Positions 11,051-21,904 of a stretch of DNA of 64,000 nucleotides are shown one piece after another; the stretch's first letter is position 1, and every line of letters starts with the position of its first letter. The notes under the pieces were generated by a model. It was not told the origin of the DNA. It was given only the letters and a program-made list of their open reading frames with translations, and ran no database searches. The DNA is taken from positions 62,001 to 126,000 of the IMG/VR virus record IMGVR_UViG_3300033153_013547; one strand, given 5' to 3'. The position numbers were made by a program, and so were the translations under genes.

Positions 11051-11083
11051 AAAAAAATACCTGCCCCCATTACAGGGGCAGGT
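11051..11083 (-). terminator. rho-independent terminator
   Basis: ACCTGCCCCT-GTAAT-GGGGGCAGGT then T7 on minus strand, just after the 11092 stop. Confidence 0.8.
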
Positions 11084-11091
11084 TGGGATGG

Positions 11092-11445
11092 TTACTGTGT
11101 GATGACACGAGTTTCTTGGACTGTGTTGGCTTCGCAGGCTTTACGAAGCCTTTCCCCATCGTTCTGGGAAATGGTCTCGATCAACTTTGCCACTTTGGTA
11201 GCGGTCTTTTTGTCGACTGGAATCCACTTTCCGTTGTCGGGGCGACGAATTCGGATATCGAATCCGTCAGGACTTACAGTAACCATGATGCTGGTTTTGG
11301 AATCATTGGAATTGAGGAAGAAAAACCAGTTAACCTCCTTGTTCCCTGTCAAGCGGATGCCCCCGCTGTTGGCATTGAAATCTCCGACGGGGAACAACCC
11401 CTTTGGGCTGTTGTCGATGATTTCCACGTTTTTAAAGTAGCTCAT
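11092..11445 (-). CDS. hypothetical protein (start revised to MSYFKNV)
   Basis: AGGAG SD before ATG 11445; terminator follows. Confidence 0.7.
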   Translation of the reverse strand: MSYFKNVEIIDNSPKGLFPVGDFNANSGGIRLTGNKEVNWFFFLNSNDSKTSIMVTVSPDGFDIRIRRPDNGKWIPVDKKTATKVAKLIETISQNDGERLRKACEANTVQETRVITQ

Positions 11446-11476
11446 AACGCACACTCCTAAAAGTTTGTTTGTCACG

Positions 11477-11744
11477 CACATCCCGTGACATAGTCTTCAG
11501 GACGAACTGCGGCTTGGCCTAGCCCCGAGCGTTAGCGAGCCCAGGAGAAGAAATGGGAGAGGTCTGACTACCATTAAAATATAAAACATGTCAGACCTGA
11601 AGGGTTCCTATTTCTTCGGATGGGTGTAGGGCTAGGCCAAGGGAGAGCAGTTTGTCACAATGTATGTCACGGATGTGAGATCGTCTAAAGTTGCGCTAGT
11701 CTCCTTTCTTTTCAAATAAATAAGTGGCTAGCGCAACTTTAGAC
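11477..11744 (+). other. ~200-nt imperfect rod plus a 62-nt hairpin; structured ssDNA or ncRNA candidate
   Basis: Five nested stems at 11477-11677 and a 19-bp stem at 11683-11744; mismatches read as G-T on the + strand. Confidence 0.65.
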
Positions 11745-12051
11745 ACCTTATGGATGTCTTTTTGACTTAGAAAAGGCGGTCAGAAATAGAAGAACCTTTC
11801 TCTATCTCCCCCCACCTGGAGAATTGCAAAATTGTCAAAAAGCATCATTGTGTAAACTACAAGCAAGTAATGTGCTACTTATTCTTAGATTGTATCATAT
11901 TGTTCTTAGATTATGCCACATCCTGAACTCAAAGCAAAACAGGGGGCATAGACGTGTTGTATGTGCAGAAGGCGATGGTCTGCCGAAGGCAACACAATGT
12001 AATATTATCTATTAAAGTTGCCCTCAGCAGACCCATCAACATCAATCCAAG

Positions 12052-12222
12052 CTAATCACTTGGGAAAATGGGATACCGTGGATCATCCAGATCCTGGGGG
12101 GGGTCTTCCACTTCATAATGTGGACACCCATCACAATCTGGGCCTACGATATCCGTCAAGCCACACACCGACTCGTTGTCGGATAGGCTAAACCACAGAT
12201 GGACACAGGCCTCTTTTTCCAT
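12052..12222 (-). CDS. 56-aa acidic Cys-containing mini-protein, not in ORF track; last cassette of array
   Basis: AAGGAGG SD supplied by repeat R1; MEKEACVHLW...DDPRYPIFPSD. Confidence 0.7.
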   Translation of the reverse strand: MEKEACVHLWFSLSDNESVCGLTDIVGPDCDGCPHYEVEDPPQDLDDPRYPIFPSD

Positions 12223-12227
12223 CTCTT

Positions 12228-12307
12228 TCCTCCTTCAAGAAAGAATCACTATGCATTCATCATGGCACAATGTAGCTTCATGGCCACCAGCTACTCGGCC
12301 AAGCAGT
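12228..12307 (-). repeat. array repeat R1 (pseudoknot + P3 hairpin + SD)
   Basis: GGCCGAGTAGCTGGTGGCCATGAAGCTACATTGTGCCATGATGAATGCATAG...AAGGAGG. Confidence 0.9.
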
Positions 12308-12631
12308 TTAGTCACGAGGATCTATAACCCCTTCGATTTCATAGTCATCAACCTCTTCGATTTCACGGTCATTATTATAATCATACGAAACTTCATCGAT
12401 CCCCACCCTGAAGAGTGGGGATCCTCCACCACACGCGTCGAGGAACGCCATCTTTACCTGATGGGGATTTTGCCAATCATCATCAGGTTCGATGATCTTA
12501 ACCCCCCGTGTACTTGCAACAATACGGCCACCGATCTCATCAATGGCAAGAAACGCAGGCTTGCCATCATCGGTAACCGACATGAATGCCCCATATGTTA
12601 AATTGAAGTAGTTGTTAAAAAACAGATTCAT
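12308..12631 (-). CDS. acidic hypothetical protein ending DPRD
   Basis: 107 aa, between R2 and R1. Confidence 0.75.
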   Translation of the reverse strand: MNLFFNNYFNLTYGAFMSVTDDGKPAFLAIDEIGGRIVASTRGVKIIEPDDDWQNPHQVKMAFLDACGGGSPLFRVGIDEVSYDYNNDREIEEVDDYEIEGVIDPRD

Positions 12632-12731
12632 CTCTTCCTCCTTAGAAAGAAATCATCACACTTTCGTAGTGATCAAGTGATCGGATGATCACACGTAGCT
12701 TCATGGCCACCAGCTACTCGGCCACACAGCT
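12632..12731 (-). repeat. array repeat R2 (pseudoknot + alternative GTGATC hairpins + SD)
   Basis: Near-identical to R9; shares the pseudoknot with R1/R5/R7/R8. Confidence 0.9.
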
Positions 12732-12887
12732 TTAGTCACGAGGATCCAGATCCAACTCAGGATCCAGATCCAAGACATCAACATCAACCCCCCATCTGCA
12801 ATCTTGTTGATAAACAAGATCGCACTCTTCTCCCTCGGAAAGGAGGCAAGTTATGCCATCCTTCCCTAGGTATTTGCATTTTTTCAT
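12732..12887 (-). CDS. 51-aa acidic Cys-rich mini-protein ending DPRD (start revised)
   Basis: MKKCKYLGKDG...LDLDPRD; the longer ORF-track start reads through repeat R3. Confidence 0.7.
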   Translation of the reverse strand: MKKCKYLGKDGITCLLSEGEECDLVYQQDCRWGVDVDVLDLDPELDLDPRD

Positions 12888-12984
12888 TTTTCTTCTCCCT
12901 TGCCCCAAAGCACAACTCTTTGGGGCAAATCGCCATGCATTCATCATGGCACAATGCAGCCACAGTGCTAACGGCTGCTCAGCT
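12888..12984 (-). repeat. array repeat R3 (pseudoknot + P3 + P4 + SD)
   Basis: GCTGAGCAGCCGTTAGCACTGTGGCTGCATTGTGCCATGATGAATGCATGGCGATTTGCCCCAAAGAGTTGTGCTTTGGGGC. Confidence 0.9.
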
Positions 12985-12990
12985 AAAATG

Positions 12991-13956
12991 TTAAACAGGC
13001 ACAATCGAGTCGCTTCCTGCCTGCAACCTGCGCCTGTTTCCCAACACGATCCCCTCTTTCGTGTTGGCGTAGCAGTAACTGCAAAGGTGTGGGCAGGTGT
13101 TATATTGCCCGATGTCTTTGCTGGCAGCGCATCCGCAGATGCGCCGCTGCCCTGAATCTTTCAGTCCGGCTGGAGTGCCGAAAAGTTTCAGCAGTGCCGG
13201 ATCATTATTTGAGATTCGGAGCAACAGCTCGTCATCGATACATTTGTTTGGCTCGATGCTTGGTTGCTGAAGATCGAGCGGCTCGGCGCAAGTCGCCAAT
13301 TTTAGCCCCCATTGCTGATTCAATCTTACCAAACCTGAAGCTGTCTCACGCATTAAAAATGGTGTGAAATCGAGCCATTTGACGCCCTTTGCCTTTAGGT
13401 TGTTTCGGACTTTACCATAAGCGTCCATATAACTGAAAACCAACTTTTCCGTATATGGATGCAATTGGTCGCCCACTCGTTTAACCTTTTCGAGAAGTCG
13501 CTCAACATTGAGCTCTTCTGTTAAGATTAGAGGATCGAAACGCCAAATCACTCTATGCTTGCCAAGACGGTTGGACAACTCTTGGAATGATTGAATGCGC
13601 GACTCCAGAGGCGGCACATTCGGTTCCAACGCGCCGCCATGGTCTGCGACATAGTCGTTGACCGTGAACTGGAAATAGTAGGCGACGCCTACTTGATCCA
13701 GCTTTTTAAGGTGTTTCATCAAGGGTTTTGGATTCTTACTCCAAAAAACGATGGCGCGCATACGCTCAAAGGAAACAAACTGGGATTTCCCATTAAAAGG
13801 ATTAACCCAGCGTGAATAGCCTTCTTCGAGTCGTCGCATAAACCAATCAGAATAAAAGGCTGGAATATCGGTAGATCGACTAGCCGATATAACTTCCGGC
13901 GCCACAGCCGTATGCACTCCACTGGATGTGGAGATTTCAGTTCTTTTCCACCTCAT
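12991..13956 (-). CDS. DUF1848 family protein (radical-SAM-like, C-terminal Cys cluster)
   Basis: ISASRSTDIPAFYSDWF, FWSKNP, WRFDP, CGCAASKDIGQYNTCPHLCSYCYAN. Confidence 0.88.
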   Translation of the reverse strand: MRWKRTEISTSSGVHTAVAPEVISASRSTDIPAFYSDWFMRRLEEGYSRWVNPFNGKSQFVSFERMRAIVFWSKNPKPLMKHLKKLDQVGVAYYFQFTVNDYVADHGGALEPNVPPLESRIQSFQELSNRLGKHRVIWRFDPLILTEELNVERLLEKVKRVGDQLHPYTEKLVFSYMDAYGKVRNNLKAKGVKWLDFTPFLMRETASGLVRLNQQWGLKLATCAEPLDLQQPSIEPNKCIDDELLLRISNNDPALLKLFGTPAGLKDSGQRRICGCAASKDIGQYNTCPHLCSYCYANTKEGIVLGNRRRLQAGSDSIVPV

Positions 13957-14050
13957 CTACTCTCCCTACCCCAAAGCACAACTCTTTGGGGCAAATCGCC
14001 ATGCATTCATCATGGCACAATGCAACTTCATTGCTATCAGTTGCTCAGCT
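13957..14050 (-). repeat. array repeat R4
   Basis: Same architecture; S2 stem variant GCAACT/AGTTGC. Confidence 0.9.
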
Positions 14051-14057
14051 AATTAAT

Positions 14058-14582
14058 TCACCAATTCTGTTGAACAAACGCCACAATGGCGTCAAAGGTG
14101 TTTAGATCAACATCTTTGACGCCATTGTTGCCAATGATGGTCAACGGAATCCCCAGGCCAAGGGCAATCCTTATCCCCTGGCCTGTACCACCAAGGCCCC
14201 GTTTGTTAGACGGAGCAGCAATTACAGAATCACAACCAAAAATGATTCTGTAATTCCTTCCGTGCAACTTCCTTGCCCCCATAGACAAATATCCTGGGGC
14301 AGGATGATATTTGTCAACGGAAGCAAAGGCCGCCTGGTCGCTCATGGACAAAACATGAACGACCTTGCAAAGGCCCTGGATTTGAGAATTGTACGACGGC
14401 CACGGCACATGACCTTCAGTACTTATTCCCAAATTTCTGGCATGCTCGATGGCAACTTTGTCAATACCATCAGCGCAGCCAGAGACAACTACAGACCCTT
14501 TATCAAGAGATTCTACAATCTCTCTGACAATGCGGATCTGGGGACCAGAGGGGTCTCTGGTCCCTATCACAGCAATCTTCAT
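14058..14582 (-). CDS. SLOG superfamily (DprA/Smf-like) nucleotide-binding protein
   Basis: IAVIGTR, VVSGCADGID, GGTGQGIRIALGLGIP. Confidence 0.75.
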   Translation of the reverse strand: MKIAVIGTRDPSGPQIRIVREIVESLDKGSVVVSGCADGIDKVAIEHARNLGISTEGHVPWPSYNSQIQGLCKVVHVLSMSDQAAFASVDKYHPAPGYLSMGARKLHGRNYRIIFGCDSVIAAPSNKRGLGGTGQGIRIALGLGIPLTIIGNNGVKDVDLNTFDAIVAFVQQNW

Positions 14583-14666
14583 TCCTTTTCTCCTTCAAAA
14601 AAGAATCGCCATGCATTCATCATGGCACAATGTAGCTTCATGGCCATCAGCTACTCGGCCAGGCAG
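14583..14666 (-). repeat. array repeat R5 (no P4)
   Basis: Close match to R1. Confidence 0.9.
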
Positions 14667-14673
14667 ACAATTG

Positions 14674-14934
14674 TTAATGAACAATCACTCCATCTTTCAC
14701 CCTTCTTAGGGCAAAGATGAAGTCATCGCCTTGCATATAGACGATGACCTTTACATCCGAGGTGTCGAAACACTCTATACTGGTCTCGACAAATTTTAAG
14801 GGATCGTTAAGGTACGCATCAGCGTCATTAACATCCAGCACCCATGTGCCGGTTATCGGGAGCCTAAACGCCTCCCGAATGATAACATGTGATCCCGGAC
14901 TTGCCGGGATCGTGGGGTATATAATTCTCCTCAT
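14674..14934 (-). CDS. hypothetical protein (start revised to MRRIIYP)
   Basis: AAGGAG SD of R6. Confidence 0.65.
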   Translation of the reverse strand: MRRIIYPTIPASPGSHVIIREAFRLPITGTWVLDVNDADAYLNDPLKFVETSIECFDTSDVKVIVYMQGDDFIFALRRVKDGVIVH

Positions 14935-14940
14935 CCCCAT

Positions 14941-15032
14941 CTCCTTTGCCCCAAAGCACAACTCTTTGGGGTAAAATCGCCATGTATTCATCATGGCACA
15001 ATGTAGCCTTATGACTATCGGCTGCTCAGTCA
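14941..15032 (-). repeat. array repeat R6
   Basis: S1 variant GACTG/TAGTC. Confidence 0.9.
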
Positions 15033-15039
15033 AGAGAAC

Positions 15040-15423
15040 TTAGGCAGAATCTCTGATCTTCATCAGGATCCTGCCCAGATGGTTCAGTCCAACTCCGTTG
15101 CTTACGCCCCAGAATTGGTCTCCCCACCAATTCTCTTCAACGATCTCCCCCTTTATGGCCTGAAGTTTGGCCATAAAGACAGGATCGCTGAACTTTTTAC
15201 TTACCAGATCCTCCATGATCTGGAGTTTGACCTGATCCCAGTCAGGCCTAAGCCTAACTGTTTTGCCAATCTTTTTGGCAATAAACCCGTTGGTCACACC
15301 AACGAATCTTGCCTGATCAGCAGGATCAGTACACTTTGCCTTCTGGTACTCCACCTCCACACAGTACCCTAACGAATTAGGACACATGTTGGACAGAAAC
15401 CAGAAGATGCCCCTGAATCTCAT
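15040..15423 (-). CDS. NADAR (YbiA-like) ADP-ribose/N-glycosidase
   Basis: FLSN, VEYQKAK, RPDWDQVKLQIM, KF, IVEENWWGDQFWG, GLNHLGRILMKIR; AAGGAGG SD. Confidence 0.9.
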   Translation of the reverse strand: MRFRGIFWFLSNMCPNSLGYCVEVEYQKAKCTDPADQARFVGVTNGFIAKKIGKTVRLRPDWDQVKLQIMEDLVSKKFSDPVFMAKLQAIKGEIVEENWWGDQFWGVSNGVGLNHLGRILMKIRDSA

Positions 15424-15433
15424 AATCACCTCC

Positions 15434-15847
15434 TTAGTGATATATCTCAACATTCAGATCAAGATCAGCCAGTTTATCAGACATCATCTGCCTAACCACT
15501 GGCCAATCCAGACCTCCAAGGCCACATCCAAGCCTGGGGAAGGCTATGGACCTAAAACTCCAGGTTTGGGTGGCAAAATCATCAAGACCATCAGAGATAT
15601 ACTCCAATTTGCTTGGATCTCTCCAATGATCCTTGGTGGGGAACAGTAGAACATTCTCCACCAAGATGACCTTGCCAGGCCTTAGAATGCCTGCAGAGCA
15701 TAGCCTGGCATACTCTGCAAACACCATGGGAAACCTTGCTTTGAACTCCAAGGCAAGACCCTTGCCCATCACGCCAACACAGTTGACGGGATTGACAAGA
15801 ACCTCACATTTGGAATCAAACAGATCCCCCCGCAGCAACAACAACAT
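15434..15847 (-). CDS. macrodomain ADP-ribosylhydrolase (DarG/Poa1/TARG1-like class)
   Basis: GDLF, VNPVNCVGVMGKGLALEFK, FPTKDHW, SIAFPRLGCGLGGLDW. Confidence 0.9.
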   Translation of the reverse strand: MLLLLRGDLFDSKCEVLVNPVNCVGVMGKGLALEFKARFPMVFAEYARLCSAGILRPGKVILVENVLLFPTKDHWRDPSKLEYISDGLDDFATQTWSFRSIAFPRLGCGLGGLDWPVVRQMMSDKLADLDLNVEIYH

Positions 15848-15951
15848 CTCCTCCTCCTTTACCCCAAAGCACAACTCTTTGGGGTAAAATCGCCATGTAT
15901 TCATCATGGCACAATGTAGCTTCATGGCCACCAGCTACTCGGCCAAGCAGT
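15848..15951 (-). repeat. array repeat R7
   Basis: GGCCG-type pseudoknot + P3 + P4. Confidence 0.9.
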
Positions 15952-16155
15952 TTAATCACGAGGATATCTGATGACATCATTCATGGTATCATGGTCAATA
16001 TCAGCAGATATCGTCTTGATTGCTTCCAACTTGATGAAAGCGCACAGAAGTCCCCGCACTTCTTCGATTTCATCAAATAAAATCTTGCTCCGATGAAAGA
16101 GCAAGACTATCGTCACCACAAGGGCGGCGATAATAATCGACATTAATAACAACAT
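15952..16155 (-). CDS. 67-aa membrane-anchored protein ending YPRD (start revised)
   Basis: MLLLMSIIIAALVVTIVLLF hydrophobic N-term; SD from R8. Confidence 0.7.
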   Translation of the reverse strand: MLLLMSIIIAALVVTIVLLFHRSKILFDEIEEVRGLLCAFIKLEAIKTISADIDHDTMNDVIRYPRD

Positions 16156-16258
16156 CTCCTCCTCCTTTACCCCAAAGCACAACTCTTTGGAGCAAAATCG
16201 CCATGTATTCATCATGGCACAATGCAGCTTCATGGCCACCAGCTACTCGGCCAAGCAG
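16156..16258 (-). repeat. array repeat R8
   Basis: Near-identical to R7. Confidence 0.9.
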
Positions 16259-16561
16259 TTACTTCTTCTGCTTTTCAACCCATTCCTTTATCACGTCTCC
16301 GTGACAAGGGCTGGGTTTGCAAAAGCAGACAAGGGTCTTCCCATCAAGTTCAAGCACCCTCCTCTTGAACTCGGGGTCAGACCCCAATCTGCTCAGGAAG
16401 TACTCCCTATACTTAGGTAGGGAGCTACCCCCTGAGCCGGGGAATGGATTCCCAAAATATCCATCCATTCCCCTACCAGCCCTTCCTATGTAAACATAGG
16501 AAGGGTCATCGCGCCACCCCTTAGGGGCGTCGCGAATATTAATAACGTTGATAGGCAACAA
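16259..16561 (-). CDS. DUF4326 family protein
   Basis: YVYIGR...FGNPF...LDGKTLVCFCKPSPCHGDVI; AAGGAGG SD favours TTG at 16561 (ORF track start 16594). Confidence 0.85.
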   Translation of the reverse strand: MLPINVINIRDAPKGWRDDPSYVYIGRAGRGMDGYFGNPFPGSGGSSLPKYREYFLSRLGSDPEFKRRVLELDGKTLVCFCKPSPCHGDVIKEWVEKQKK

Positions 16562-16629
16562 AATCACCTCCTTTTGTTGCCGGTCAATCGACACGGTTTC
16601 GGCAGACCACGTGTCATTCTGCAGACAAA

Positions 16630-17070
16630 TTACATGAAATCTCCCACAATCAGGTCACCCTTCTTGTGGGAGATTTTCTTCCCCCTTGGTCGGGGCGCAG
16701 GCACCTTCTTGGCGGGCACCTTCTTGGCAGGTGCCTTAACCTCTCTGGGCCACTTGCAATAATGCTTGACTGGCCCAGAGGCAGGCCGCTCTGCTGTTGC
16801 TGCCACCACTTCCACAGCAACAGCCTTTTTCACAGTAGGCCCAACCACATCATGGATGAGCCTACTGCAACACAGCTGCTTCCTGAGACGAAGTATTGCC
16901 TCGCCTCCGTCCACGCCTGTGGGGATCGTGCCCCTCCAACCGGGAACACGTTCCCCGTTGAGGTAGGCTTCACAGTACTGAAGCCCACCCCTTTCAAACA
17001 GGGGGGAGAATTTAATCTTTACCCTCTTCCCCCCCAACAAAATGTCAGGGGGACGAATCAAATTAGGCAC
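16630..17070 (-). CDS. hypothetical protein with basic PAKK tail
   Basis: AAGGAG SD, GTG start; KAPAKKVPAKKVPAP repeat. Confidence 0.65.
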   Translation of the reverse strand: MPNLIRPPDILLGGKRVKIKFSPLFERGGLQYCEAYLNGERVPGWRGTIPTGVDGGEAILRLRKQLCCSRLIHDVVGPTVKKAVAVEVVAATAERPASGPVKHYCKWPREVKAPAKKVPAKKVPAPRPRGKKISHKKGDLIVGDFM

Positions 17071-17143
17071 AGTAACACACTCCTTTCTGCCAGGTATATC
17101 CTGGATCAGATGAGCAGTTTATTGTCTTGCTCAGGACACAATG

Positions 17144-17464
17144 TTATAAACCAAGTTCCTCCCTGACACGATCCCTATTGACGGGATAAATGTTTATCTC
17201 ATCTATCCCATCAATAGAAACCCTGAACAATTGCCAGGGGCCCCCATCTGCTGGGATGAACCAGTATAGAGGATTATACCCCTTGGCTTCCTCAAACTCC
17301 TTCGCTGCTCTTCCGAACAGCGAATTCTTCCGGGGATTTTGTTGCCAAACTTCTCCCCAAATCTGCCCTATTGGCTTGGCAGATTTGAGCATCACCCCAG
17401 AAATGGTGGCTCTTGGTGCGGAGCAGACCGCCTTACGCACCAAGGCAATAATTTTCTCTTCCAT
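17144..17464 (-). CDS. hypothetical protein
   Basis: SD from R9. Confidence 0.75.
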   Translation of the reverse strand: MEEKIIALVRKAVCSAPRATISGVMLKSAKPIGQIWGEVWQQNPRKNSLFGRAAKEFEEAKGYNPLYWFIPADGGPWQLFRVSIDGIDEINIYPVNRDRVREELGL

Positions 17465-17562
17465 TTTTCCTCCTTAGAAAGAAATCATCACACTTTCGTA
17501 GTGATCAAGTGATCGGATGATCACGCGTAGCTTCATGGCCATCAGCTACTCGGCCATACAGT
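17465..17562 (-). repeat. array repeat R9 (R2 type)
   Basis: Near-identical to 12632-12731. Confidence 0.9.
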
Positions 17563-17645
17563 TTAGTCACGAGGGTCCAGAATGTCACCATGGCTTGTTG
17601 TCAGCCAGAAATGGCTTTCAACCCATAGACCAATGCCCCAACTGA

Positions 17646-18611
17646 CTAAATTCCCCGTGCCCAGAGAGCGTTCCGGCGCGCTTCTTTTTCGGCGCGCGCC
17701 TTTTCAACTCGTTCGCGAAGCTCCGGGGGAACATAGCCCGGCGTGTCGGGCGGTTCCGTAGCAGACACCGTAAATGTCTGCAGGAAAACGCTCGCGTACT
17801 CTTCCACCTGTTCGAGGGACAGCTCGACCCCCGAACGCAGCTCTTTGGGCAACTGGTAATCCAGATCAACTTCCACCACTCTCTCGGCGTGAACCGCGAT
17901 GTGTGGCGGGAGGCTGCCTTGCGTGGTATAAACGTCCTTCCCCATCACGTCATCCACTGCGGCATTCTCCACGACTGGCGTTCCCTTTGTCACCAGTCCT
18001 ATTTTCTCCAGATACGTCACGAACGCCGGATGGCGCGTGACGATGATGTTCCCATTTTCCATGGGAACAATATCCGACGCCCTGAGCAAATCTGACGCGA
18101 TGAAAGAGTACGCCTTGAGCTCACCGCTCGCGTACTCTTCCACCTGTTCAAGGGTCAGTTCGACCCCAGAACGCAGTTCATCGGGTAAATCGAGCGTGAG
18201 CTCGATTAACTTTTCTGAATACACCGCCAAGTGCAGGGGAATATACCCCTGCGTGGTGTAAACAGACCTTAAGGGACCGAGAGGTATCCCCGTCATGTCA
18301 TGACGGCTCCGCACATTCTTGAGCCACGTCACACGCCGTGCGCTGCCGAATGTGTGGATCTTCGCAAAATAACGCGCCACTGCGAGGTGGCGCGAAACGA
18401 CAAGATCTTTCGGCGGATAAATCTCCACTAGTCGGACAACGCGCGACTCGCCCTCCTCCAGGTAATTCCCGTAGGAATCCTGGACGGAACCCGAGGCTAT
18501 CGTCGTTCGATAGCCGTGCTCGATATCTATGGGGCCGCACCGGCGACCCTTGAAGTCCCTGATTTTCTCAAGCCTAGCCTCATTCCAGGCTTGAAACTCC
18601 TTCTCATTCAT
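17646..18611 (-). CDS. tandem two-domain Csx16-like (Cas_VVA1548) putative ring nuclease
   Basis: Two repeats of VV(S/T)RH...G(Y/S)(I/L)PxH(L/I)A...LPxELRSGVEL(T/S)LEQVEEYA. Confidence 0.7.
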   Translation of the reverse strand: MNEKEFQAWNEARLEKIRDFKGRRCGPIDIEHGYRTTIASGSVQDSYGNYLEEGESRVVRLVEIYPPKDLVVSRHLAVARYFAKIHTFGSARRVTWLKNVRSRHDMTGIPLGPLRSVYTTQGYIPLHLAVYSEKLIELTLDLPDELRSGVELTLEQVEEYASGELKAYSFIASDLLRASDIVPMENGNIIVTRHPAFVTYLEKIGLVTKGTPVVENAAVDDVMGKDVYTTQGSLPPHIAVHAERVVEVDLDYQLPKELRSGVELSLEQVEEYASVFLQTFTVSATEPPDTPGYVPPELRERVEKARAEKEARRNALWARGI

Positions 18612-18668
18612 ATCAATCTCTCCTTGCCCTGCACTAGCCGCGGCAGGGCTTCGCGGTTGTGTGTTACC

Positions 18669-18953
18669 CTATGCAAACTGCACGATGTACGCCACGGGCG
18701 TGCTGGCGTATTCGCGCACTTGCTCAAGGGTCAGCTCGACCCCCCTCATCTCCGCCGGAATATCCAGCGGAACTTCGATCACTCGCCGCGCATGCACGGC
18801 GAGCCGAAGAGGAAGAACGCCGAAAACGTTCTTCCCCATTACATCGTCGACCGTGGCATGTGCCACGATGGGCGTGCCTTCCGGCACTAACCCTATCTCG
18901 ATCAAATACGTCACCAATGCTGGGTGACGCGTAACAACAATACTTTTATTCAT
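18669..18953 (-). CDS. csx16: Csx16-like (Cas_VVA1548) putative cOA ring nuclease, 94 aa (start revised)
   Basis: IVVTRHPA...GVLPLRLA...LDIPAEMRGVELTLEQV fits the Csx16 pattern hhsRHpgA...GtLPxhLA...LdlPxexRGxELs. Confidence 0.75.
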   Translation of the reverse strand: MNKSIVVTRHPALVTYLIEIGLVPEGTPIVAHATVDDVMGKNVFGVLPLRLAVHARRVIEVPLDIPAEMRGVELTLEQVREYASTPVAYIVQFA

Positions 18954-19048
18954 CTCTTCTCCTTTACCCCAAAGCACAACTCTTTGGGGCAAATCGCCAT
19001 GTATTCATCATGGCACAATGCAGCCACAGTGCTGTCGGCTACTCAGCT
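18954..19048 (-). repeat. array repeat R10
   Basis: Same architecture as R3. Confidence 0.9.
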
Positions 19049-19086
19049 GTGGGGGGCGATCCTGTTTCGATGTTGACAGGATCCAT

Positions 19087-19117
19087 AAAAAAAGAGAGAG
19101 GCCCGAAGGCCCCTCTC
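19087..19117 (-). terminator. rho-independent terminator (copy 1)
   Basis: GAGAGGGGCC-TTCG-GGCCTCTCTC + T7. Confidence 0.85.
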
Positions 19118-19120
19118 CGA

Positions 19121-19210
19121 TGATGCCTATATTTCTCCTTTCCCGGCATCAGGGAGTTTCACCACTATGCAGGTGACGCATACATTTTGTTTATCCAGAT
19201 GTAAACTGGA
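19121..19210 (-). ncRNA. candidate structured RNA, three tandem H-type pseudoknots (copy 1)
   Basis: TCCAG/CTGGA + TACAT/ATGTA; TGC/GCA + TCACC/GGTGA; TCCC/GGGA + TGATGCC/GGCATCA; covaries with copy 2. Confidence 0.55.
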
Positions 19211-19234
19211 ATCCGGTTTTGAAAGGGGAGGGGG

Positions 19235-19690
19235 TTACTCTATTATTGGGAGGACATCCCCTTCTTCAAAGTCATACTGCCACGGATCATAATCCGTGGC
19301 AAGACCAATTGCTGTGACCATGTCTTTTGCGACGATCACAGCAAACCCCTGAAATTCCTCGCCCCCATCGTAGGGGACGAGGAACCCCCCGGGTTCCTTT
19401 TCTTCCGGACACTCCGGAAGGTTGGGGGCAAGTTTTCTTGCCCCCAACTGAAGGGTCCTCCAGACGGAGGTTTTTACTCCGTCTAGAAACCCTGACTCCC
19501 CACGTAAAATGGGGTAAAACACGCTAGTCGCTGCAGCGGCCAGCGTGCTCGCTCCTCCGGCTCTCATGAGCCGGAAGTACGAAATATTGCCGCTAACAGC
19601 AACTGGGCACCACGTCCTGTGGAGGGGCAGACACTGCCCATACCCCTCCACAGGGCGTAAAAAGACCGATAGCCAAAAAATTTTAGCCAT
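19235..19690 (-). CDS. hypothetical protein, paralog of 19972..20442 (start revised)
   Basis: MAKIFWLSV...FRLMRAGGA...LVPYDGGE. Confidence 0.75.
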   Translation of the reverse strand: MAKIFWLSVFLRPVEGYGQCLPLHRTWCPVAVSGNISYFRLMRAGGASTLAAAATSVFYPILRGESGFLDGVKTSVWRTLQLGARKLAPNLPECPEEKEPGGFLVPYDGGEEFQGFAVIVAKDMVTAIGLATDYDPWQYDFEEGDVLPIIE

Positions 19691-19696
19691 TCCCAT

Positions 19697-19787
19697 CTCC
19701 CTTACCCCAAAGCACAACTCTTTGGGGTAAAATCGCCATGTATTCATCATGGCACAATGCAACCACAGTGCTAACGGCTGCTCAGCT
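19697..19787 (-). repeat. array repeat R11
   Basis: Same architecture as R3. Confidence 0.9.
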
Positions 19788-19825
19788 GTGGGGGGCGATC
19801 CTGTCTCGATGTTGACAGGATCCAT

Positions 19826-19857
19826 AAAAAAAAGAGAGAGGCCCGAAGGCCTCTCTC
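19826..19857 (-). terminator. rho-independent terminator (copy 2)
   Basis: GAGAGAGGCC-TTCG-GGCCTCTCTC + T8. Confidence 0.85.
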
Positions 19858-19860
19858 CGG

Positions 19861-19952
19861 TGATACCTATATTTCTCCTTTCCCGGTATCAGGGAGTTTC
19901 ACCACTATGCAGGTGACGCATACATTTTGTTTATCCAGATGTAAAAACTGGA
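19861..19952 (-). ncRNA. candidate structured RNA, three tandem pseudoknots (copy 2)
   Basis: TGATACC/GGTATCA compensatory change; a 2-nt insertion falls in a loop. Confidence 0.55.
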
Positions 19953-19971
19953 ATCCGATTTTGAAAAGGGG

Positions 19972-20442
19972 TTACCCTATTATCGGGATAATATCCCGAT
20001 AATCCGTAGCAAAGTCGTCTCGCCACAGATCGTAATCTATGGCGAGATCAATCGCCGTGGTCGCATTTTTTGCGACTACGACGACAAACCCCTCGAATTC
20101 GCCCCCATCGTAGGGGACGAGCACTTTGCAGAATACCCCGGAACGTTCCGGGATATCGGGGGCAAGCAAAGCTACCCCCACCTGCATTGTTCTCCGGACA
20201 AATGTTACCCACTTGTCTAGAGAATTTACCTCGCTCAAGAGCCAATCCGCATTTGTTAAAATGGGATAAAATATACTAGCCACTATAGCGGTTAGTATAT
20301 CCGCTCCTCCGGCTCTCATGAGCCGGAAGTGCGAAACGCCGTCGCTTTCAGCGACGACGTTCCATGACTCATTATCGGGGGGGTTTTCTTTAAACCCCTC
20401 GATCTTGTCGAGTAAAACTGACAGCCAAAAGATCTTGGCCAT
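19972..20442 (-). CDS. hypothetical protein, paralog of 19235..19690 (start revised)
   Basis: Shared motifs; SD from R12. Confidence 0.75.
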   Translation of the reverse strand: MAKIFWLSVLLDKIEGFKENPPDNESWNVVAESDGVSHFRLMRAGGADILTAIVASIFYPILTNADWLLSEVNSLDKWVTFVRRTMQVGVALLAPDIPERSGVFCKVLVPYDGGEFEGFVVVVAKNATTAIDLAIDYDLWRDDFATDYRDIIPIIG

Positions 20443-20537
20443 CTCCTCCTCCTTTGCCCCAAAGCACAACTCTTTGGGGCAAATCGCCATGTATTCATCA
20501 TGGCACAATGCAACTTCATTGCTATCAGTTGCTCAGC
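20443..20537 (-). repeat. array repeat R12
   Basis: R4-type pseudoknot + P3 + P4 + AAGGAGGAGG. Confidence 0.9.
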
Positions 20538-20628
20538 GTCATATCGCAGATTTCCTAACCGGTGTCTGCCAACCGGCCACAGCCAAAATAGTGACTGTGG
20601 CCACCGCCTACGTTGCGGAGGCGGTGGT

Positions 20629-20835
20629 TTAAAACCCCCGAGCCTCAAGGTCGAGGCATATGTCTTCGTATGCCTCGACCTTGAGCTCGTCAGCAAGGGA
20701 ATCTAAATAACTCCCTTGCTGAACGTTGAGGCGTTCTACCTTGCGGCAGAACGCCTCAACAAGCTCAAGGCGACGATAAGGATTCTTGCAATCCTTAATC
20801 GCCTCCTTGAGCTTAAACAACTCAAGAAATCTCAT
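20629..20835 (-). CDS. 68-aa hypothetical protein, first gene of array (start revised)
   Basis: AAGGAGG SD before MRFLELF. Confidence 0.7.
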   Translation of the reverse strand: MRFLELFKLKEAIKDCKNPYRRLELVEAFCRKVERLNVQQGSYLDSLADELKVEAYEDICLDLEARGF

Positions 20836-21342
20836 AAACACCTCCTTCAACGACATAGGGCATCTATTTATACCCCTCTTTGGCCCTATCACAGAATTGT
20901 GTCCATCTTCGACCAGATGGAAGAATTACTCCCTTAGGCCATATAGTTTGGGGGTGGGCATCATCTGATAACTCCACCCCTAAACTATCATTCTGGTCAG
21001 CCCCCCAAAATTCATCACAGAATTGCCTTATAAACAGACAAAAAAATTGCCTCATGAACAAACAACATTCTTCATAGCTAGCTAGATAAAAACTAACTTT
21101 CAGTCAGTCTTCCAAAATTCACAAATTTACTCCTTCATTGAATGATCCATATACTATAAAAACTTTTTCTCAAACAACTTCTCAAAAAATATATGCAGTA
21201 ATAATTCCCATGTAAGGGCTAAAATAAAATCTCTCTCTGGCCTCCAAAATAAAATAATTATTATCTAATAAGGTAGTATAGATGGGTAGATGGGTAGATA
21301 TCCTGCCTTATTTACTAAAATAGGATTTACTTTTAATTAATT

Positions 21343-21696
21343 ATGCCACAAACACGTGAAGAACGTATTTCTAACTATGCTGATGTGTCTGTAAGAGTAG
21401 CTGTGAAATACCACATAGATGAAGAGTTGTTGGACTTAGATAGTAATAATAAATATGACCAGAGGTATATGGAAGGGCAGATGTGCTACAAGGAACAAGA
21501 ACTGTTTTTTGAATATAAAATAGAACAGGCTGCCAGGAAAACACTCTGTAAGCTATTTATACAGACTTTAACTGAAATAAAACGTATTATGTATGACTCT
21601 ACTGATCACAGGACTTTTGAATACCTGCAGACAATGAAGGATGTTGCAGAAAAACACCCTATAATAGCAGAATATTTAGAGAGCCATGAATCTTAG
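21343..21696 (+). CDS. hypothetical protein
   Basis: First gene after the strand switch. Confidence 0.7.
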   Translation: MPQTREERISNYADVSVRVAVKYHIDEELLDLDSNNKYDQRYMEGQMCYKEQELFFEYKIEQAARKTLCKLFIQTLTEIKRIMYDSTDHRTFEYLQTMKDVAEKHPIIAEYLESHES

Positions 21697-21904
21697 AGAA
21701 AAACTTGCAACATTAGAACACAAACAATGGGCACACTGGACCAAGTATATGTTGGCCAACCTTACTGATGAAAATATATCCAGGTGGAAACGTCAGATTG
21801 ATACGTCTTATGACCAATTAAGTGAACAGGAGAAAGATAGTGATAGGGAGTGGGCAGATAAAGTGCTTGAATTATTGCAAGACGAATTAGACAGTATTAT
21901 TTAG
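21686..21904 (+). CDS. small RyR-domain-like protein
   Basis: LATLEHKQWAHW...YDQLSEQEKDSDR resembles the RyR repeat. Confidence 0.6.
   Translation: MNLREKLATLEHKQWAHWTKYMLANLTDENISRWKRQIDTSYDQLSEQEKDSDREWADKVLELLQDELDSII

What the first reader, a model, noticed from the sequence alone, without database searches (positions are those of the whole stretch)
19049..19971. Duplicated triple-pseudoknot + terminator element upstream of the Csx16-like genes
Seen: a ~185-nt block occurs twice (19049-19234, 19788-19971). On the minus strand it reads as three back-to-back H-type pseudoknots, an intrinsic terminator, a GATCCTGT/ACAGGATC hairpin, then the array repeat. Differences inside the stems preserve pairing: TGATGCC/GGCATCA becomes TGATACC/GGTATCA, G-U becomes A-U in the terminator, and a 2-nt indel lies in a loop. 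Terminators inside a co-oriented array need read-through or a new promoter, and the 5' CCCCTTTC tract can pair with the terminator's 5' arm in copy 1. Inference: attenuator/riboswitch, or a released small RNA (e.g. a decoy of pseudoknotted type III antitoxin RNAs).
Basis: partly seen in the sequence, partly recalled or inferred. Interest (0 to 1): 0.72.

Follow-up and report, generated by a model that had tools for sequence, protein, structure and literature searches.

The report
Conserved terminator-bearing RNA tail, duplicated
A giant phage carries two near-identical 185-base non-coding tails, each ending in a strong transcription stop signal, behind two diverged copies of an unknown gene and just upstream of its anti-CRISPR genes; a likely host's RNA-targeting CRISPR system holds a spacer against this tail, but the proposed triple pseudoknot and riboswitch are not shown.

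Summary
The duplication is real. Blocks 19049-19234 and 19788-19971 (minus strand) are about 96% identical. Each directly follows the stop codon of one of two paralogous orphan genes (parA, parB; dS about 0.8). Each ends in a strong intrinsic terminator, then a GATCC hairpin and the 100-nt array leader.

The window lies in a 261-kb jumbo phage. The array is a GC-rich island of anti-defence cassettes (Csx16 ring nucleases, Macro, NADAR, DUF4326, SLOG).

New evidence:
- A CRISPR array in a sediment MAG with a type III-B Cmr system carries a spacer matching the block (42 of 44 aligned positions) and another matching a par homologue. The inferred crRNAs are antisense to the array mRNA.
- The same MAG carries Csx16 genes 74-77% identical in DNA to the phage's.

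One hairpin has a compensatory change. The three pseudoknot stems never vary, two pseudoknots overlap and one is sterically strained. Their score is unusual against shuffles but only top 2-10% within the array. No Rfam match, no antiterminator beyond chance, no tandem repeats and no homologues elsewhere were found.

Best reading: a conserved, transcribed 3'-UTR and terminator module that punctuates the array. A riboswitch or ToxI-type decoy is unsupported; a 3'-derived small RNA remains possible. No RNA run was listed, so expression could not be checked.

The parts
19119..19234 (-). Block copy 1, part before the terminator. Contains a C/U tract (19234-19221) directly after the parA stop codon and three short hairpins: P2 19210-19194, P3 19176-19159, P4 19151-19121.
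   Evidence: P4 carries the only compensatory change. Nested fold z = -0.8.
19093..19118 (-). Intrinsic terminator of copy 1: 11-bp stem, UUCG loop, followed by U7 at 19092-19086.
   Evidence: pair probabilities about 1.0; -21.1 kcal/mol, z -5.2.
19058..19083 (-). Post-terminator GATCCTGT/ACAGGATC hairpin, copy 1.
   Evidence: I4; z -2.4.
19153..19196 (-). Protospacer in copy 1 matched by spacer S1 of the MAG AUK090 CRISPR array. It spans the P2 3' arm, P3 and CUCC.
   Evidence: 42 of 44 aligned positions identical, with 32 contiguous exact.
19859..19971 (-). Block copy 2, part before the terminator. Contains a C/U tract directly after the parB stop codon and hairpins P2 19952-19934, P3 19916-19899, P4 19891-19861.
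19833..19858 (-). Intrinsic terminator of copy 2, followed by U8.
   Evidence: -22.0 kcal/mol, z -5.3.
19797..19822 (-). Post-terminator hairpin, copy 2. The stem is 9 bp because of an A-to-G change.
   Evidence: z -4.9.
19893..19936 (-). Second protospacer for spacer S1, in copy 2.
19235..19690 (-). parA, an orphan 151-aa gene whose stop codon abuts block copy 1.
19972..20442 (-). parB, a 156-aa paralogue of parA (56% aa identity) whose stop codon abuts block copy 2. Spacer S6 matches a homologue of it at 20062-20097.
18954..19048 (-). Array leader repeat (three hairpins plus Shine-Dalgarno) between block copy 1 and Csx16.
19691..19787 (-). Array leader repeat between block copy 2 and parA.
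17646..18953 (-). Csx16 (18669-18953) and a 321-aa protein with one Pfam-detected Csx16 domain and an internal repeat, read as a double Csx16 (17646-18611). These are the first genes downstream of copy 1.
   Evidence: Pfam PF09652. 74-77% nt identity to genes of MAG G002.

Best explanation
The block is the conserved 3' untranslated module of the 'par' gene cassette. It is duplicated because the whole cassette (gene, 3' module and array leader) was duplicated in tandem within a phage anti-defence cassette array.

The block is transcribed with par. Its strong Rho-independent terminator ends most transcripts there, which would define a stable, hairpin-protected 3' end for the par mRNAs. The terminators would also act as two serial stops or attenuators at the head of the leftward operon. 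Genes downstream (Csx16 ring nucleases, DUF4326, Macro, NADAR, SLOG and others) would then be reached only by read-through or from a start site not yet recognised in the leader.

Shown:
- the duplication;
- the terminators and hairpins;
- conservation far above that of the adjacent coding sequence;
- one compensatory pair;
- a matching CRISPR spacer in a MAG that encodes a type III-B system.

Inferred:
- that the terminators work in vivo and are largely constitutive;
- that the roughly 115 nt before the terminator serve RNA stability, processing or factor binding rather than ligand sensing;
- that conservation reflects selection rather than homogenisation.
For: - The two copies are 96% identical, and each starts at the base after a par stop codon.
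- parA and parB have dS 0.82 and dN 0.35, against about 3% divergence in the block.
- Hairpin 1 of the array leader right next to the block differs at 4 of about 25 positions between the same two cassettes. A single recent conversion tract running through block and leader is therefore unlikely.
- The terminators are strong and predicted to form with probability about 1.0.
- Under strict criteria the 261-kb genome has only three credible strong terminators. All are on the minus strand of the GC-rich island, and the third closes it at 11059-11083.
- In a third lineage, spacer S1 matches the block at 42 of 44 aligned positions, while spacer S6 matches the par gene at only 34 of 40. Both are sense to the array in the orientation in which the MAG's array appears to be the non-transcribed strand.
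- The MAG encodes Cas6 and Cmr1-Cmr4.
- No known RNA family matches.
Against: - Only two full copies and one 43-nt spacer exist, so selection and gene conversion limited to the block cannot be separated.
- About 115 conserved nucleotides are more than a plain terminator needs.
- The unusual potential for interleaved helices hints at a more specific RNA function: 0-1 of 500 shuffles reach the score, though it ranks only top 2-10% within the array.
- No expression data exist.
- The phage encodes its own multisubunit RNA-polymerase-like protein. Its response to such terminators is unknown.
- No promoter was recognised downstream, so how the downstream cassettes are expressed is unexplained.
- The transcribed strand of the CRISPR array is inferred, not measured, and no cas gene lies on the array's contig.
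Confidence: 0.45

Rival explanations
1. Conditional attenuator. The roughly 115-nt RNA senses a ligand, a protein (for example Par itself) or the ribosome terminating at the par stop codon. It then decides whether the terminator forms, gating expression of the downstream anti-defence genes.
For: - A conserved structured region lies immediately 5' of a terminator and between cistrons.
- In transcripts that end before the terminator 3' arm, the C/U tract directly after the stop codon pairs with the purine-rich 5' arm in both copies and encloses the three hairpins.
- The arm's G-to-A change is matched by a C-to-U change in the tract in the homologous register.
- CUCC can pair either with GGAG in the P4 loop or with GGAG of the terminator arm.
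- The tract lies within the footprint of a terminating ribosome (established knowledge of ribosome footprints).
Against: - Tract-to-arm complementarity is no better than shuffles, and is only about -7 kcal/mol in copy 2.
- The terminator is 10-18 kcal/mol more stable than the alternative fold.
- No Rfam hit.
- The region is not more stable than shuffles in nested folding.
- There is no covariation in the proposed switch helices beyond one ambiguous pair, and the tract alignment is uncertain because of a 5-nt indel.
Confidence: 0.2
2. A 3'-UTR-derived or independently made small RNA of about 150 nt that ends at the terminator and acts in trans, for example as an anti-defence or regulatory RNA.
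For: - The layout is typical of 3'-end sRNAs: it starts at the stop codon, ends in a strong terminator with a long U tract, and is more conserved than the ORF.
- It lies in an anti-defence island.
- It is matched by a spacer in a MAG that encodes a type III-B system, which fits an abundant RNA.
- A -10-like ATAAT sits in the last codons of both par genes, and copy 1 has a 9/12 promoter-like site at 19269-19242.
Against: - The promoter-like site is not conserved in copy 2.
- No similarity to the host CRISPR repeat or to any host sequence.
- No tandem repeats.
- No target can be proposed.
- No RNA data.
Confidence: 0.17
3. No function beyond termination. The near-identity is a footprint of recent recombination or gene conversion, as with PeSL-type composite motifs that shuffle cassettes in T4-like phages.
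For: - The block sits in an array whose 100-nt leader recurs at least 10 times and even encodes the shared C-terminal tail DPRD of several ORFs, a sign of recombination at the repeats.
- All block substitutions are transitions and few in number.
- PeSLs are described as composite terminator/promoter motifs that mediate modular shuffling (PMC2839356, PMC4122927).
Against: - Divergence is heterogeneous: the block differs by 3%, while leader hairpin 1 beside it differs by 16%.
- The high-identity tract starts almost exactly at the stop codon.
- A compensatory pair preserves P4.
- The third-lineage spacer also shows the block more conserved than par.
Confidence: 0.15
4. The block is translated, either as a stop-codon read-through extension of Par or as a small ORF.
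For: The frame after TAA stays open for 37 codons in both copies. The -5 and +2 indels keep that frame (sequence).
Against: - The spacer S1 variant has a 1-nt deletion inside this frame.
- UAA read-through is rare.
- The only substitution in the shared part is non-synonymous.
- There is no internal start with a Shine-Dalgarno sequence.
- Plus-strand mini-ORFs are frameshifted by the A-run indel.
Confidence: 0.03

Closest known systems
Rho-independent (intrinsic) terminators with structured 3' UTRs
   Same: A GC-rich 11-bp hairpin with a UUCG loop and a 7-8 U tract, on the coding strand just after a gene.
   Different: It is preceded by about 115 nt of sequence conserved far above the adjacent ORF and followed by a second conserved hairpin. 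It lies inside a co-oriented gene array rather than at an operon end.
PeSL composite promoter/terminator motifs of T4-like phages (PMC2839356, PMC4122927)
   Same: Conserved intergenic motifs containing a terminator stem-loop recur between variable, mostly unknown genes in a plastic phage region. The sequence pattern suggests recombination at the repeats.
   Different: No sigma-70-type promoter is found here. The recurrent element is a 100-nt three-hairpin leader with a Shine-Dalgarno sequence. The terminator-bearing block occurs only twice and is much longer. There is no sequence relation.
Inter-cistronic transcription attenuators, e.g. the repeated PyrR-dependent attenuators of the Bacillus subtilis pyr operon (from established knowledge), and riboswitches
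   Same: Repeated conserved RNA plus terminator modules lie between the first cistrons of an operon.
   Different: No conserved antiterminator beyond chance, no known aptamer, no known binding protein.
Type III toxin-antitoxin RNA antitoxins (ToxI, CptI, TenpI; from established knowledge)
   Same: Pseudoknot-capable RNA followed by a terminator and then a protein gene, in a phage-defence context.
   Different: No tandem direct repeats, no ToxN-family neighbour, and the block follows its partner gene rather than preceding it.
3'-UTR-derived small RNAs of bacteria (e.g. CpxQ, SroC; from established knowledge)
   Same: Starts near the stop codon, shares the mRNA's terminator, and is more conserved than the ORF.
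   Different: No evidence of processing or of a target. The setting is a phage and the host biology is unknown.
RNA anti-CRISPRs (phage-borne CRISPR-repeat mimics; from established knowledge)
   Same: Non-coding RNA in a phage anti-CRISPR neighbourhood.
   Different: No similarity to the candidate host's CRISPR repeat. Here the RNA is matched by a spacer, so it looks like a target rather than a mimic.

Membership tests
Intrinsic terminator | GC-rich stem-loop immediately followed by a U tract on the transcribed strand | tested here: met
   11 bp with 7 G-C pairs, UUCG loop, U7/U8, -21 and -22 kcal/mol, z about -5.
Intrinsic terminator | Transcripts actually end there | not testable with these tools
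   No RNA run was listed. The contigs laid were uninformative.
Riboswitch / transcription attenuator | Match to a described aptamer or leader family | tested here: not met
   Rfam 15 at gathering and at E<=10 gave only sub-threshold terminator-like sbrA hits.
Riboswitch / transcription attenuator | Conserved alternative (antiterminator) pairing that competes with the terminator | tested here: inconclusive
   Pairing exists in prefix folds of both copies. It is no better than shuffles and weak in copy 2.
Riboswitch / transcription attenuator | Covariation-supported aptamer fold | tested here: inconclusive
   One compensatory pair among 70 proposed pairs, with only two sequences.
H-type pseudoknot (three in tandem) | Two interleaved helices with loops long enough to cross the grooves | tested here: inconclusive
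   PK1 and PK3 are feasible. PK2 has loops of 0, 0 and 2 nt, and PK1 and PK2 overlap by 2 nt. The score is unusual against shuffles but only top 2-10% within the array. The stems are invariant.
Type III TA antitoxin RNA (ToxI-like) | Tandem direct repeats of a 34-45-nt unit | tested here: not met
   Tandem Repeats Finder found none in 18900-20100. The three units are unrelated in sequence.
Type III TA antitoxin RNA (ToxI-like) | Adjacent ToxN/AbiQ-type endoribonuclease toxin | tested here: not met
   parA and parB have no Pfam or PHROG hit. The downstream genes are Csx16.
PeSL-type composite motif | Terminator stem-loop joined to an early promoter | tested here: not met
   The terminator is present. 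No sigma-70-like promoter lies after it or in the leader. Phage-polymerase promoters cannot be judged.
PeSL-type composite motif | Recurs between variable genes of a plastic region | tested here: met
   This holds for the leader repeat (10 copies, array only). The block itself occurs only twice.
RNA anti-CRISPR (repeat mimic) | Sequence or structure resembling the host CRISPR repeat | tested here: not met
   Local alignment to the G002 repeat is at chance on both strands.
Type III CRISPR protospacer | Spacer match, crRNA complementary to a transcript, no anti-tag in the 3' flank | tested here: met
   Match at 42 of 44 aligned positions. The sense of three matching spacers and the array polarity are inferred from degenerate repeats and leader position. 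The 3' flank CUGAUGCC is not complementary to the 8-nt tag (read from sequence). Cmr genes are present in the MAG. The array's transcribed strand was not measured, and no cas gene lies on the array's contig.

The most novel reading that the evidence does not exclude
The block is a new cis-acting RNA switch. It is pseudoknot-rich and is read out through the C/U tract that a ribosome terminating on par would cover, or through a small-molecule or Par-protein signal. It sets how much transcription passes two serial terminators into the phage's ring-nuclease and ADP-ribose/NAD-related anti-defence genes. Alternatively, it is a stable RNA effector of that island. Either reading would be a first example of RNA-level control or action in a jumbo-phage counter-defence cassette array.
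Probability: 0.15. Interest if true: 0.75.

Novelty: new variant of a known kind. Interest (0 to 1): 0.45.

Why it matters
If the block only terminates transcription, its value is as annotation. It marks transcript boundaries in a jumbo-phage anti-defence island and explains a striking repeat.

The context found here matters more. The phage carries an array of host-derived counter-defence cassettes, including cA4 ring nucleases of the Csx16 family (bioRxiv 10.1101/2024.09.24.614671). The cassettes are wired together by a conserved structured leader. A candidate host with a type III-B system holds spacers against this island, one of them against the non-coding block.

That gives a concrete phage-host pair from deep-sea sediment in which type III targeting and ring-nuclease counter-defence could be tested. 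It also gives a defined RNA whose unusually strong conservation calls for an experiment.

Tried and rejected
Homologue searches that found nothing:
- Exact-word scans for the block, the leader, the spacer-variant block and the par-like spacer found nothing related in IMG/VR or JGI metagenomes. The single IMG/VR hit (L003) and the Actinomycetes hit (L008) are chance matches inside coding sequence.
- blastn against GenBank phages and PLSDB plasmids gave no match.
- Protein-based locus searches with parA and the double Csx16 in IMG/VR found none.
- par homologue searches returned only the window's own proteins and one spurious repeat protein. The Atlas gave no lead. The AlphaFold model was unusable, with pLDDT 38.
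- No par homologue was found in 61 genomes around the candidate host. No further spacers or repeats were found there.

Uninformative sources:
- L006 is a 100% identical 10,125-nt contig of the same island, so it is not independent. No att-like repeats lie at its ends.
- Sequencing runs: one low-coverage DNA run was found, no RNA run was listed, and the laid contigs were uninformative.

Readings rejected:
- Coding readings (plus-strand mini-ORFs, a 6-codon ORF, read-through extension) are rejected on indels and on the spacer variant.
- The plus-strand promoter-like site at 19219-19246 is lost in copy 2 through the 5-nt indel.
- CRISPR-repeat mimicry is rejected, as is a tandem-repeat antitoxin.
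- The leader is not a genome-wide phage promoter motif, because it occurs only in the array.

Full report
**What is there.** On the minus strand, the stretch 19971-19788 and the stretch 19234-19049 are 95-96% identical. A profile search of the whole genome finds only these two copies.

Each copy begins at the base after the TAA stop codon of a gene. Copy 2 follows parB (19972-20442). Copy 1 follows parA (19235-19690). Each copy ends where the roughly 100-nt leader repeat of the array begins.

From 5' to 3', each copy holds:
- a C/U-rich tract;
- three short hairpins: UCCAG/CUGGA, UCACC/GGUGA, and UGAUGCC/GGCAUCA (UGAUACC/GGUAUCA in copy 2);
- a strong intrinsic terminator (11 bp, UUCG loop, U7 or U8; -21.1 and -22.0 kcal/mol, z -5.2 and -5.3);
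- a GATCCTGT/ACAGGATC hairpin.

**Where it lies.** The window is bases 62001-126000 of a 261-kb virus record with direct terminal repeats. The phage encodes a multisubunit RNA-polymerase beta-like protein, so it is a jumbo phage.

The block sits near the head of an island of about 50% GC in a 38% GC genome. The island holds about 15 small co-oriented genes, including:
- Csx16, and a 321-aa protein with one Pfam-detected Csx16 domain and an internal repeat, read as a double Csx16;
- DUF4326, Macro, NADAR, a SLOG/DprA-like protein and DUF1848.

Csx16 proteins are cA4-specific ring nucleases (bioRxiv 10.1101/2024.09.24.614671). The island therefore looks like a counter-defence array.

Ten cassettes are preceded by the same leader of three hairpins plus a Shine-Dalgarno sequence. 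Hairpin 1 of the leader covaries: three pairs show double changes. The leader occurs nowhere else in the genome.

**A candidate host and a third lineage.** A 20-mer from the block hit the end of a contig of a sediment MAG named 'bacterium isolate AUK090'. The hit lies in a CRISPR array with a 37-nt repeat.
- Spacer S1 matches both block copies at 42 of 44 aligned positions, with 32 contiguous exact.
- Spacer S6 matches parB at 34 of 40 positions with codon-like differences, so it comes from a par homologue.
- Spacer S5 looks like the Shine-Dalgarno sequence and start of a SLOG-like gene, judged by eye. Alignment to the array scored at background.

The same MAG encodes Cas6 and Cmr1, Cas10/Cmr2, Cmr3 and Cmr4, which is a type III-B system. 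No Cas1 was found, and no cas gene lies on the array's own contig.

Two features indicate that the array is transcribed from right to left. Degenerate repeats lie at the left ends of the two sub-arrays, and leader-like sequence with a TATAAT lies to their right. In that orientation the repeat ends in GUUUGAAAC, just after its CCCC-UUCG-GGGG hairpin. All three recognisable spacers would then give crRNAs antisense to the array mRNA.

This is indirect evidence that the block is present in RNA in the sense orientation. It rests on an inferred array polarity, to which I give about 80% confidence.

The MAG also carries a Csx16 gene and a double-Csx16 gene that are 74-77% identical in DNA to the phage's. 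This supports gene exchange with this host lineage.

**Conservation.** parA and parB share 56% of residues, with dS 0.82 and dN 0.35. The block shows about six transitions and three indels in 185 nt.

Hairpin 1 of the leader right beside the block differs at 4 of about 25 positions between the same two cassettes. The low divergence is therefore specific to the block.

The third lineage shows the same contrast: 95% identity for the block against 85% for par. The numbers are small, and gene conversion limited to the block cannot be excluded.

**Structure claims.** On the two-copy alignment, 70 proposed pairs are all maintained.
- One pair is compensatory (hairpin P4).
- One changes from G-U to A-U (terminator).
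- Every pseudoknot-specific stem is invariant, so nothing tests them.

The 113 nt before the terminator fold no better than shuffles in nested folding (z -0.8 and -0.1).

It beats dinucleotide shuffles (0/500 and 1/500). Against natural 113-nt windows it ranks in the top 0.1-0.3% genome-wide, but only in the top 2-10% within the GC-rich array. It falls to the array mean if loop 3 must be at least 4 nt.

PK1 and PK2 share two nucleotides. PK2 has loops of 0, 0 and 2 nt. The triple pseudoknot is therefore permitted but not demonstrated.

**Switch claims.** At equilibrium the terminator pairs have probability about 1.0.

In transcripts that end before the 3' arm is made, the C/U tract pairs with the purine-rich 5' arm in both copies. 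The arm's G-to-A change is matched by a C-to-U change in the tract. However, this complementarity is reached by 39% and 49% of shuffles and is weak in copy 2.

Rfam finds nothing. There are no tandem repeats, no similarity to the host CRISPR repeat, and no other similarity to the host genome.

**Terminators in the genome.** Under strict criteria, the only credible strong terminators in 261 kb are the two in the blocks and one at 11059-11083, which closes the island. All three are on the minus strand. No sigma-70-like promoter follows the block terminators. How the downstream cassettes are transcribed is open: by read-through, or from a promoter for the phage polymerase that cannot be recognised here.

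**Verdict.** The pseudoknot reading is unproven.

The best-supported explanation is a conserved, transcribed 3'-UTR and terminator module of a tandemly duplicated cassette that punctuates an anti-defence array (confidence 0.45). The rivals are:
- a conditional attenuator (0.20);
- a 3'-derived small RNA (0.17);
- a recombination footprint with no extra function (0.15);
- translation of the block (0.03).

No homologues were found in any collection searched, and no RNA run was listed. The decisive tests are therefore experimental.

Noticed in passing
window 12222-20545, minus strand: An array of about 15 small genes in which at least 10 are preceded by the same roughly 100-nt leader (three hairpins plus a Shine-Dalgarno sequence). 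Hairpin 1 covaries (GCAGCC/GGCTGC, GTAGCT/AGCTAC, GCAACT/AGTTGC). The leader occurs only in this array. It resembles PeSL-type shuffling motifs or a cassette adaptor.
   Followed up: partly
L015 (G002:C67) 15926-16676; L018 (G002:C80): MAG 'bacterium isolate AUK090' has a CRISPR array with spacers matching the block and a par homologue, and one that by eye resembles the start of a SLOG-like gene. It also has a type III-B Cmr locus with Cas6, next to a DS32 (PRTase + NADAR) anti-phage pair. It is a likely host lineage for this phage.
   Followed up: partly
window 17646-18953 vs L023 6902-8196 (G002:C42): The phage Csx16 and double-Csx16 genes are 74-77% identical in DNA to a gene pair in the MAG, which sits in an operon with an SMC-like ATPase beside a serine recombinase. 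The gene order is swapped. This points to recent host-phage gene transfer of ring nucleases.
   Followed up: partly
window 17467-17581 and 12635-12750, minus strand: A second leader type is 96% identical between two cassettes. It shares hairpin 1 with the main leader but has different downstream hairpins. Several ORFs end in the same DPRD tail, which is encoded by the start of the repeat.
   Followed up: no
window 11631-21755 (= L006): A separate 10,125-nt JGI contig is 100% identical to exactly this GC-rich island. No att-like repeats lie at its ends. The assembly break may reflect a variable island within the phage population.
   Followed up: partly
window 11059-11083, minus strand: Third strong intrinsic terminator (ACCTGCCCCTGTAATGGGGGCAGGT followed by a T run), right after ORF 11092-11481. 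Together with the two block terminators, these are the only credible strong terminators found in 261 kb.
   Followed up: partly
genome 24474-24809 (outside the window): A 565-aa ORF matches RNA polymerase Rpb2 domain 6. The phage probably has its own multisubunit RNA polymerase, as phiKZ-like phages do, so promoter and terminator rules may differ from the host's.
   Followed up: no
window 19234-19124 and 19971-19864, minus strand: The reading frame after the par TAA stays open for 37 codons in both copies, and indels of -5 and +2 keep the frame. A 1-nt deletion in the spacer variant argues against translation.
   Followed up: partly
window 20541-20640, minus strand: The 3' UTR of the first small gene (orf68, 20629-20835) is also strongly structured (-48.4 kcal/mol, z -4.6) just before the first leader repeat. 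Its sequence is unrelated to the block.
   Followed up: no
window 20900-21340: An AT-rich gap with no ORF of 80 aa or more lies between the leftward array and rightward ORFs starting at 21343. It is the likely divergent promoter region for the island.
   Followed up: no
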